DNA from: Octopus sinensis
Taxonomy: Eukaryota
NCBI RefSeq assembly: GCF_006345805.1
Contig: NW_021825116.1
Location: 1 to 22,549 of the forward strand
Direction: 5' to 3'
DNA: 22,549 nt
The translations under genes were made by a program, and so were the position numbers. The notes under the pieces are model-generated. The model saw only the letters and a list, made by a program, of their open reading frames with translations. It did not search any database and had not been told where the DNA came from. The number at the start of each line of letters is the position of its first letter. The first letter of the stretch is position 1. This document shows, one piece after another, positions 17,129 through 17,202 of the stretch.

Positions 17129-17202
17129 CCAGCAAGCCATGCTACTCCAGACTGATGACGAGCAAAACTCAGAAACTAGTCTCTGGATGCAGGCTTAGCT
17201 GG
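17129..17202 (+). ncRNA. Type I minimal hammerhead ribozyme (predicted)
   Basis: Stem I TCCAGA(17146-51)/TCTGGA(17182-87). Core CTGATGA at 17152-58. Stem II GAG-caaaa-CTC. GAAA at 17172-75. Palindromic ACTAGT (17175-80) in place of stem III. GUC triplet ending at 17181. Bulged stem I extension CCAGC/GCTGG, AAGCC/GGCTT, TGC/GCA. Confidence 0.75.

What the first reader, a model, noticed from the sequence alone, without database searches (positions are those of the whole stretch)
17129..17202. Well-formed minimal hammerhead ribozyme in apparently unique intronic DNA
Seen in sequence: TCCAGA-CTGATGA-C-GAG-caaaa-CTC-A-GAA-ACTAGT-C-TCTGGA. It has a perfect 6-bp stem I, the full catalytic core, a GUC cleavage triplet (predicted cut after 17181), and a 6-nt palindrome in place of stem III. 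Stem I extends by 13 more bp with bulges. Established: type I minimal hammerheads with palindromic stem III act as dimers and are linked to Penelope-like elements and metazoan retrozymes, and a bulged stem I allows the loop II tertiary contact. Inference: this is an active or recently active ribozyme, with no recognisable transposon around it. Caveats: the stem II closing pair (10.1-11.1) is a C.A mismatch, and the motif is antisense to the VOPP1-like pre-mRNA, so it needs a plus-strand transcript.
Basis: partly seen in the sequence, partly recalled or inferred. Interest (0 to 1): 0.85.

Follow-up and report, generated by a model that had tools for sequence, protein, structure and literature searches.

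The report
Solitary Schistosoma-type hammerhead ribozyme copy
The motif is real and is very probably a genuine member of the well-known animal type I hammerhead ribozyme family, sitting as a single, slightly damaged copy inside a small hairpin-shaped mobile-element remnant, which makes it an ordinary rather than a surprising find.

Summary
The sequence is exactly as described at 17146-17187(+). It is not a chance match. A covariance model built only from the published N79 Schistosoma ribozyme picks 17136-17194 as the top hit in the window (22.4 bits, E about 2e-4).

It is therefore the canonical animal type I hammerhead, the retrozyme or satellite kind, and not the minimal Penelope kind. Helix III is one base pair plus a palindromic CUAG loop. 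The monomer is predicted to misfold, while a dimer is predicted to form the double hammerhead.

The motif caps a 134-nt hairpin (17099-17232). Imperfect direct repeats flank it at 17081-17119 and 17239-17265, which suggests about 1.2 copies of a rod-like unit of roughly 150 nt, a solitary retrozyme-like insertion.

Weak points:
- There is a C.A mismatch at 10.1-11.1.
- No Rfam hammerhead model matched.
- No homologues were reachable, so copy number and covariation are untested.
- Activity is untested.

Verdict: a new member of a known kind, of low to moderate interest.

The parts
17081..17265 (+). Inferred whole insertion: about 1.17 copies of a 148-158-nt rod-like unit carrying one hammerhead (retrozyme-like element)
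   Evidence: Bounded by the direct repeats. GC 0.48. No copy elsewhere in the window.
17081..17119 (+). Left copy of the imperfect direct repeat (CACTGGAA ... TCAAGGCC ta GACAAG). Its 3' part forms the base of the hairpin.
   Evidence: Collinear exact blocks of 8+8+6 nt are shared with 17239-17265. None of 5000 dinucleotide shuffles reaches this chain score. Pairing of 17099-17121 with 17210-17232 is shown.
17239..17265 (+). Right copy of the direct repeat: start of a truncated second unit, or a 'tail'
17099..17232 (+). Long imperfect hairpin (extended helix I, about 42 bp in all) with the hammerhead at its apex
   Evidence: MFE -57.1 kcal/mol, z -4.4 on the + strand; -49.9, z -2.8 on the - strand. 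4 G.U pairs favour the + strand.
17143..17145 (+). 5'-UAC internal loop of helix I, the partner of loop 2 in Schistosoma-type ribozymes
   Evidence: Same letters at the same distance (6 bp) from the core as in N79.
17146..17151 (+). Helix I, 5' strand (UCCAGA)
   Evidence: Six Watson-Crick pairs with 17182-17187.
17152..17158 (+). Core C3-U4-G5-A6-U7-G8-A9
17159..17171 (+). Helix II: C17159.A17171 mismatch (10.1-11.1), GAG/CUC 3 bp, loop 2 CAAAA
   Evidence: The CM marks only this pair as non-standard.
17172..17174 (+). Core G12-A13-A14
17175..17180 (+). Helix III: A15.1-U16.1 closing the palindromic CUAG. ACUAGU can pair with itself in a dimer (6 bp).
   Evidence: Dimer cofold.
17181..17181 (+). 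C17. The predicted scissile bond lies between 17181 and 17182.
   Evidence: Position relative to the core. Cleavage was not tested.
17182..17187 (+). Helix I, 3' strand (UCUGGA)
17188..17188 (+). Single U opposite the UAC internal loop
   Evidence: Same as in N79.

Best explanation
17146-17187(+) is a genuine descendant of the canonical animal type I hammerhead ribozyme. This is the kind found in Schistosoma Sm-alpha, newt satellite 2 and metazoan non-LTR retrozymes.

It sits at the apex of a 134-nt rod-like hairpin. That hairpin, together with a 27-39-nt flanking direct repeat, looks like about 1.2 copies of a 148-158-nt unit. I read this as a solitary insertion of a small, non-autonomous, retrozyme-like element, made by more-than-unit-length copying of a self-paired (possibly circular) RNA, probably by Penelope-like machinery. 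It landed antisense in an intron.

How it would work, if a plus-strand transcript exists:
1. Helices I and II and the UAC/U bulge-loop 2 contact assemble the core.
2. Helix III is too weak in one molecule (1 bp plus a CUAG loop). Cleavage after C17181 therefore needs two copies pairing through ACUAGU to form a double hammerhead.
3. Cleavage leaves a 2',3'-cyclic phosphate and a 5'-OH.

As a lone copy with a C.A pair at the base of helix II, this locus is most likely a weak or inactive relic.

Shown: the sequence, the fold predictions, the similarity to N79 and the direct repeat. Inferred: the retroelement origin, the dimer mechanism at this locus, and the state of activity.
For: - The core and helices are present exactly as described.
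- The architecture matches the published definition of canonical metazoan hammerheads: helix I 6 bp, helix II 4 positions, helix III 1-2 bp capped by a 2-4-nt palindromic loop (PMC4209133). Amphibian ribozymes have 1 bp plus a palindromic tetraloop and cleave as dimers (PMC7229834).
- Peripheral elements are identical to the N79/Sm1 Schistosoma ribozyme, whose sequence I took from PMC12550524: UAC bulge, opposing U, CAAA(U)A loop 2.
- A CM built only from N79 gives 22.4 bits and E about 1.7e-4 over the full model at 17136-17194. The next best hit in the window scores 12 bits.
- Chance is about 3e-6 per window before the peripheral features are counted.
- The dimer MFE is the double hammerhead: -60.2 against 2 x -27.9 kcal/mol.
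- The hairpin has z -4.4. The circularised 148-nt unit is 69% paired with z -5.1, like the 'highly self-paired' retrozyme circRNAs.
- The direct repeat was reached by 0 of 5000 shuffles, and its left copy is part of the hairpin.
- Partial tandems and 30-40-bp tails are typical of Penelope-type insertions (PMC8557442).
- Retrozyme-like repeats are reported in crustaceans and many other invertebrates.
- The axolotl HHR_Amex2 has a U.U mismatch at the base of helix II and still cleaves.
Against: - No Rfam hammerhead family matched, at gathering score or at E<=10, even when only 58 nt were searched.
- The G10.1-C11.1 pair, described as highly conserved, is C.A here. Helix II has only 3 real pairs.
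- There is only one copy in 22.5 kb and no tandem array. Described retrozymes are tandem repeats of 150-450 bp.
- The unit size of about 150 nt is at or below the reported range.
- The direct repeat is short, carries three indels, and was found after looking for it.
- No homologue could be retrieved, so there is no covariation or copy-number evidence.
- The monomer's predicted MFE is an inactive extended hairpin, 1.7-6 kcal/mol better than the hammerhead fold.
- The R1 E-value is rough, and scaled to a 2-Gb genome it would not be significant on its own.
Confidence: 0.62

Rival explanations
1. It is a solo remnant of a Penelope-like element terminal repeat (pLTR), that is, a PLE-type minimal hammerhead, as the first reader leaned towards.
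For: - PLE hammerheads are very abundant, mostly occur as single dispersed motifs, and have palindromic 15.2-16.2/loop 3. Shrimp and Drosophila PLE variants have a small palindromic helix III.
- PLE hammerheads carry an extra nucleotide between A9 and 10.1. If C17159 is read that way, G17160-C17170 becomes a proper G10.1-C11.1 pair.
- A second, PLE-like motif lies 3 kb away on the other strand.
Against: - PLE min-HHRs lack the loop-loop tertiary elements, have a long helix II (6-8 bp) and a short helix I (4-5 bp). This motif has a 6-bp helix I, a 3-4-position helix II and the Schistosoma-type UAC/U and CAAA loop.
- There is no RT or GIY-YIG remnant in 14.2-17.9 kb.
- Reading C17159 as a bulge leaves A17171 as an unexplained insertion before G12.
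Confidence: 0.13
2. It is a chance look-alike. The hairpin is an unrelated foldback, MITE or pre-miRNA-like structure whose apical loop happens to spell a hammerhead core.
For: - No Rfam hammerhead hit.
- The C.A mismatch at the conserved 10.1-11.1 pair.
- Relaxed hammerhead descriptors are known to give unclassifiable hits.
- The compact core descriptor alone would give about 0.2 chance hits per 2-Gb genome.
- The number of windows the first stage read is unknown.
Against: - Eight further letters outside any descriptor (UAC, U, CAAA) sit at exactly the positions they occupy in the Schistosoma ribozyme. With these, joint chance is about 1e-5 per 2-Gb genome.
- True type I hammerheads number thousands to over 100,000 per animal genome, so the prior strongly favours descent.
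- No miRNA or other family scored better than E 0.15-0.6.
Confidence: 0.07
3. It is a domesticated, functional element of the host locus: a conserved intronic ribozyme in the manner of amniote HH9/HH10, or an antisense hairpin that yields small RNAs or regulates the VOPP1-like gene.
For: - Single copy in an intron.
- Very stable hairpin with strand asymmetry favouring the + strand.
- Intact core.
- Precedent for conserved intronic hammerheads that affect mRNA biogenesis (introduction of PMC7229834).
Against: - It is antisense to the putative gene, so it cannot cut that pre-mRNA.
- The mismatch at the base of helix II and the flanking direct repeats look like a decaying insertion.
- No conservation data could be obtained.
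- A 42-bp helix I would keep the cleavage products together.
Confidence: 0.08

Closest known systems
Schistosoma mansoni Sm-alpha (Sm1) hammerhead and its engineered derivative N79; Rfam Hammerhead_1 (RF00163) type
   Same: - Type I topology and identical core letters.
- 6-bp helix I followed by a 5'-UAC/3'-U internal loop and a further helix.
- 4-position helix II with loop 2 CAAA(U)A.
- GUC cleavage triplet.
Sources.
   Different: - Helix II starts with C.A instead of G-C, and its other pairs differ in sequence.
- Loop 2 is one nucleotide shorter.
- Helix III is 1 bp plus CUAG, where the N79 sequence used for the comparison has a 6-bp helix III closed by a UUCG loop (engineered; I did not check the natural Sm1 helix III).
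- Helix I continues for about 36 more pairs.
- No match to RF00163 in the Rfam scans.
Amphibian satellite 2 / axolotl HHR_Amex1 and HHR_Amex2 ribozymes in non-LTR retrozymes
   Same: - Helix III is a single base pair capped by a palindromic tetraloop.
- Poor cleavage as a monomer and efficient cleavage as a dimer.
- HHR_Amex2 tolerates a mismatch (U.U) at the base of helix II.
- Self-paired unit RNAs.
Sources.
   Different: Those occur in 330-350-bp tandem arrays with about 60,000 copies each. Here there is one copy, a unit of about 150 nt, and only a 27-39-nt repeat of the unit.
Metazoan non-LTR retrozymes (Cervera and de la Pena 2020), reported in crustaceans among other invertebrates
   Same: - Canonical type I hammerhead.
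- Small, highly self-paired unit.
- GC at or below 50% (0.47-0.50).
- No coding capacity.
- More-than-unit-length genomic copy.
   Different: - Not a tandem array in this window.
- Unit size is at or below the reported 150-450 bp (170-400 nt for the circRNAs).
- circRNA expression and genomic copy number are untested.
Penelope-like element minimal hammerheads
   Same: - Type I topology, palindromic helix III and a dimer requirement.
- Frequent solitary dispersed copies.
- Possible extra nucleotide after A9.
Sources.
   Different: - This motif has the tertiary-contact elements, a 6-bp helix I and a short helix II.
- There is no pLTR/RT-EN context.
Amniote intronic hammerheads HH9 / HH10
   Same: Single-copy intronic type I hammerhead of Schistosoma-like architecture.
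   Different: Those are described as highly conserved among amniotes and as playing a role in mRNA biogenesis; that they lie in the sense strand of their host genes is from my own knowledge. This one is antisense to the putative gene, and its conservation is unknown.

Membership tests
Hammerhead ribozyme, type I (canonical metazoan) | Conserved core C3 U4 G5 A6 N7 G8 A9 / G12 A13 A14 / A15.1-U16.1 / H17 | tested here: met
   All 13 fixed positions are present at 17152-17158, 17172-17175 and 17180-17181.
Hammerhead ribozyme, type I (canonical metazoan) | Three helices around the core, with helix I open-ended. Typical sizes: helix I 6 bp, helix II 4 bp, helix III 1-2 bp plus a 2-4-nt palindromic loop (PMC4209133). 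| tested here: met
   Helix I is 6 WC pairs. Helix II is 4 positions (3 pairs plus C.A). Helix III is A-U closing the palindromic CUAG.
Hammerhead ribozyme, type I (canonical metazoan) | G10.1-C11.1 base pair at the base of helix II | tested here: not met
   C17159.A17171. It is met only under an alternative reading in which both are extra nucleotides and G17160-C17170 is 10.1-11.1. A natural precedent for a mismatch here is axolotl HHR_Amex2.
Hammerhead ribozyme, type I (canonical metazoan) | Peripheral elements for the helix I - loop 2 tertiary contact | tested here: met
   The UAC/U internal loop 6 bp from the core and the CAAAA loop 2 align with UAC/U and CAAAUA of N79. The contact itself is not testable here.
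Hammerhead ribozyme, type I (canonical metazoan) | Match to the curated covariance models (Rfam Hammerhead_1, HH9, HH10, II, 3) | tested here: not met
   No hammerhead family at gathering score or at E<=10 on 351 nt and on 58 nt. A CM made from N79 alone does match: 22.4 bits, E about 1.7e-4.
Hammerhead ribozyme, type I (canonical metazoan) | Site-specific self-cleavage 3' of H17 | not testable with these tools
   Structure prediction only. The monomer MFE is an inactive fold. The dimer MFE is a double hammerhead.
Hammerhead ribozyme, type I (canonical metazoan) | Compensatory changes in the helices among related copies | not testable with these tools
   No related sequence could be retrieved.
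Metazoan non-LTR retrozyme | Head-to-tail tandem repeats of 150-450 bp, each with a type I hammerhead | tested here: not met
   There is one hammerhead and about 1.17 units only: the direct repeat 17081-17119 / 17239-17265, period 146-158.
Metazoan non-LTR retrozyme | Highly self-paired unit RNA, low GC, no coding capacity | tested here: met
   Circular fold 69% paired, z -5.1. GC 0.47-0.50. No Pfam domain.
Metazoan non-LTR retrozyme | Many genomic copies; expressed as linear and circular RNA | not testable with these tools
   The source genome and its transcriptomes are not in any collection available here.
Penelope-like element minimal hammerhead | Location in the terminal repeats of an RT + GIY-YIG element, or a recognisable remnant of one | tested here: not met
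   Pfam scan of ORFs in 14247-17880 found only a Mos1-type HTH_48, with no RT or EN.
Penelope-like element minimal hammerhead | Long helix II (6-8 bp), short helix I (4-5 bp), no loop-loop tertiary elements, extra nucleotide between A9 and 10.1 | tested here: not met
   Helix II has 3 pairs, helix I has 6 bp, and the tertiary elements are present. Only the extra-nucleotide feature is arguable (C17159).
Conserved intronic hammerheads (HH9/HH10 type) | Sense orientation in a host intron and deep conservation | tested here: inconclusive
   Orientation appears antisense to VOPP1-like exons at 20803-20871(-) and about 8753-8960(-). The exon evidence is weak (no hit). Conservation is not testable.

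The most novel reading that the evidence does not exclude
The locus represents an unusually small (about 150-nt), viroid-sized, rod-like hammerhead element of an arthropod-like genome. Its RNA would circularise with the ribozyme at one tip of the rod. Under this reading, this copy, or the family it belongs to, is still transcribed and cleaves as a dimer, below the size range described so far for animal retrozymes. Alternatively, the antisense intronic hairpin has been co-opted by the host.
Probability: 0.12. Interest if true: 0.5.

Novelty: new member of a known kind. Interest (0 to 1): 0.27.

Why it matters
If the reading is right, this is one more dispersed copy of a ribozyme family already known to populate animal genomes in thousands to hundreds of thousands of copies, with crustacean examples already mentioned in the literature. 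Its value is mostly as annotation: it marks a small retrozyme-like insertion in an intron.

Two points could merit a follow-up:
- The apparent unit size of about 150 nt, with the ribozyme at the apex of a near-perfect rod, would be at the small end for animal retrozymes.
- The C.A pair at the base of helix II is a natural variant whose effect on dimer cleavage is easy to test.

Tried and rejected
- **Rfam scans.** At gathering score on the whole window, and at E<=10 on 351 nt and 58 nt around the motif, no hammerhead family appeared. Only weak snoRNA and miRNA look-alikes did, and I rejected those as chance (E 0.15-9).
- **Second copy or tandem array in the window.** None for 17000-17400. The nearest repeat family starts at 17489 and is unrelated.
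- **Exact look-up of seven ORFs around the locus** in the protein collection, hoping to reach contigs of the same genome: none present.
- **Protein searches.** The VOPP1-like exon and the ORF spanning the hairpin gave no hits. The source species and its close relatives therefore seem absent, and I did not spend the third search or the representative-library job.
- **Pattern scans** of viral, metagenome and prokaryotic genome collections for the motif and for family-specific helix I: 0 hits.
I used concatenated ORFs instead.
- **Two older papers** (PMC4447102, PMC2933863) are not held. I took the Schistosoma-type sequence from a protocol paper instead.
- **MITE reading** (hairpin arms as TIRs, repeat as TSD): rejected, because the second and third repeat blocks lie inside the left arm of the hairpin.
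- **Simple TSD reading of the repeat:** disfavoured for the same reason, but not excluded.
- **The CTGATGA at 17464-17470(-):** no GAAA partner, so it is not a hammerhead.

Full report
**Observation.** The 13 further helix I pairs within 17129-17202 are reproduced by folding. The structure is larger than reported. 17099-17232 forms one imperfect hairpin of 134 nt (-57.1 kcal/mol, z = -4.4, with 0 of 200 shuffles as stable), and the motif sits at its tip. The minus strand folds less well (-49.9, z = -2.8). Four G.U pairs are responsible for the difference.

**Is it more than chance?** The window contains only five CTGATGA on both strands. I planted a CTGATGA in 1.5 million contexts drawn from a first-order model of the local sequence. 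A compact motif of this quality arose about 7e-7 times per core; this rests on one hit and is rough. A relaxed motif with helix I >=6 bp arose 4.6e-5 times per core. That is about 3e-6 for this window, but about 0.2 per 2-Gb genome. The core descriptor alone would therefore not exclude a chance hit if very many windows were read.

The decisive addition is outside the descriptor. The N79 ribozyme, engineered from the Schistosoma mansoni Sm1 hammerhead, is printed in PMC12550524 as GCAGG TAC ATCCAG CTGATGA GTCC CAAATA GGAC GAAA CGCGCTTCGGTGCG T C CTGGAT T CCACTGC (the same scaffold appears in PMC7118274). The window reads CATGC TAC TCCAGA CTGATGA CGAG CAAAA CTCA GAAA CTAG T C TCTGGA T GCAGG. The two share:
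- a 6-bp helix I;
- a 5'-UAC / 3'-U internal loop followed by a continuing helix;
- a 4-position helix II;
- a loop 2 of CAAA(U)A.

These are the elements of the helix I - loop 2 tertiary contact of canonical animal type I hammerheads. I first recalled this resemblance from memory of the crystallised Schistosoma construct, and then checked it against the printed N79 sequence. By composition the eight extra letters add a factor of about 4e-5, which makes chance negligible.

As an objective test I built a covariance model from N79 alone and searched the whole window with filters off. 17136-17194(+) is the top hit at 22.4 bits, E about 1.7e-4 (the calibration is rough), aligned over the full model with only the C.A pair flagged as non-standard. 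The next best hit has 12.0 bits and E 0.23.

**What argues against.** No Rfam hammerhead family matched, neither at gathering score on the window nor at E<=10 on 351 nt or 58 nt around the motif. I cannot say whether the almost absent helix III, the C.A pair or the speed filters cause this. It remains unexplained and should be resolved with an unfiltered cmsearch.

The G10.1-C11.1 pair is described as highly conserved (PMC4209133), and here it is C17159.A17171. Two mitigating points apply. First, axolotl HHR_Amex2 has a U.U mismatch at the base of helix II and still cleaves, about 22% in 1 h as a monomer and much better as a dimer (PMC7229834). Second, Penelope-type hammerheads carry an extra nucleotide between A9 and 10.1, so C17159 could be a bulge and G17160-C17170 the 10.1-11.1 pair. 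That reading leaves A17171 as an insertion before G12. As an inference only: CG to CA at 17170-17171 is the typical product of CpG decay, so the ancestor may have had a 4-bp helix II (CGAG/CUCG).

**Which kind of hammerhead.** PMC4209133 defines canonical metazoan hammerheads as helix I 6 bp, helix II 4 bp with conserved interacting loops, and helix III of 1-2 bp capped by a small palindromic loop. Such ribozymes are inefficient as monomers and active as dimers. The same paper defines Penelope-type minimal hammerheads as having a long helix II (7-8 bp), a short helix I (4-5 bp) and no tertiary elements. The present motif fits the first definition, not the second. Amphibian ribozymes have exactly the helix III seen here, one base pair and a palindromic tetraloop. 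A Pfam scan of the non-repetitive ORFs between 14247 and 17880 found only a Mos1-type HTH_48 fragment and no reverse transcriptase or GIY-YIG nuclease.

**Predicted behaviour.** For 17129-17202 the unconstrained MFE (-27.9 kcal/mol) pairs AGACU(G) with (U)AGUCU. This swallows C3/U4 and the helix III strand. The hammerhead fold scores -21.7 with helix III enforced, or -26.2 with the helix III strand left open. For two molecules, the cofold MFE (-60.2 against -55.8 for two monomers) is the double hammerhead, with a 6-bp intermolecular ACUAGU helix III. Only one copy exists in the window, so cleavage would need a second copy in the same transcript or a high RNA concentration. All of this is prediction; no cleavage was tested.

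**Surroundings.** The flanks carry an imperfect direct repeat. 17081-17119 reads CACTGGAA ttattatatt TG ttt TCAAGGCC ta GACAAG, and 17239-17265 reads CACTGGAA a TG tg TCAAGGCC GACAAG. The chain of collinear exact blocks (8+8+6 nt) was not reached in 5000 dinucleotide shuffles, although I searched for it after seeing the first block.

The left copy (17099-17121) forms the base of the hairpin by pairing with 17210-17232. This is hard to reconcile with a target-site duplication or a MITE. It is what one expects if the locus holds about 1.17 copies of a 148-158-nt unit whose RNA is a rod. Circularised, 17099-17246 is 69% paired (-53.2 kcal/mol, z = -5.1), with the ribozyme at one tip and a 14-nt loop at the other.

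Animal non-LTR retrozymes are described as 150-450-bp repeats giving 'highly self-paired' circRNAs of about 170-400 nt, and are present in crustaceans among others. Penelope-type insertions typically form partial tandems and carry 30-40-bp tails (PMC8557442). [quoted passage not shown] I therefore read 17081-17265 as a solitary, more-than-unit-length insertion of a small retrozyme-like element. This step is inference. The defining tandem array is not present here, and genomic copy number could not be examined.

**Host context.** The window is AT-rich eukaryotic DNA saturated with microsatellites. That composition reminded me of penaeid shrimp genomes, but I did not establish the organism. One is 20803-20871 (CCNTSCC...MWYFW). 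The other spans 8753-9145, and within it I place the exon at about 8753-8960 (...FLATCCGVCNYYKRKR...PPPSY). These fit consecutive parts of the protein. Neither Pfam nor the large protein collection recognised the exon.

**Homologues.** Every route failed:
- no exact ORFs in the collection;
- no protein hits for the exon or for the ORF spanning the hairpin;
- no pattern matches in the viral, metagenome or prokaryotic genome collections.

Covariation, copy number and orthologous-site conservation are therefore untested, and they are the decisive missing evidence.

**Verdict.** This is very probably (about 0.85-0.9) a true descendant of the canonical animal type I hammerhead, and probably (about 0.6 for the whole account) a lone copy of a small retrozyme-like element. 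Its present activity is doubtful. It is a new member of a known kind, and interest is low to moderate.

Noticed in passing
window 14170-14241, minus strand: A second hammerhead-like motif: GATCTCA CTGATGA A CTA[33 nt]TAG A GAAA CTCGAG T A TGGGATT. It has a 7-bp helix I (2 G.U), a long interrupted helix II, a palindromic ACTCGAGT helix III, and unpaired A's on both sides of helix II. It resembles Penelope-type minimal hammerheads but lacks G10.1-C11.1. Chance is about 1e-4 for this window and about 6 per 2-Gb genome. The N79 model does not match it.
   Followed up: partly
window 14738-14923, plus strand: ORF fragment matching the HTH domain of Mos1/mariner transposases (Pfam HTH_48, E 2.5e-11). 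It is a mariner-like remnant 2.2 kb upstream of the ribozyme.
   Followed up: partly
window 17489-17849; 4306-4674; 4675-4978: A dispersed repeat family of about 360 bp at 87-89% identity, two copies of it in tandem near 4.3-5.0 kb. It starts about 220 bp downstream of the inferred ribozyme element (about 300 bp past the hammerhead motif itself) and is unrelated to it. It contains a CTGATGA on the minus strand (17464-17470) that is not part of a hammerhead.
   Followed up: partly
window 1855-2970, 7366-8550, 9170-10880, 12756-13383, 18185-18550, 20135-20655 and others: Very dense microsatellites, (AAT)n, (TA)n, (GGA)n and GGT-rich, with some 500-bp bins below 10% GC. This composition is typical of some crustacean genomes. 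The organism was not identified.
   Followed up: no
window 20803-20871 and about 8753-8960, minus strand: Two weak VOPP1/WBP1-like coding segments (CCNTSCC...MWYFW, then ...FLATCCGVCNYYKRKR...PPPSY) that would bracket an intron of about 11.8 kb containing the ribozyme. Pfam and the protein collection do not recognise them.
   Followed up: partly
window 14820-15290, 21170-21800, 6084-6233; also 7071-7304, 9673-9893, 11156-11308: Further dispersed repeats, seen as near-identical ORF translations at several places (for example VAEH.TDTCTL.VVLGDIQRDTESDKA and MRSPCRAHMVVMH). They are probably SINE-like or other transposon fragments.
   Followed up: no
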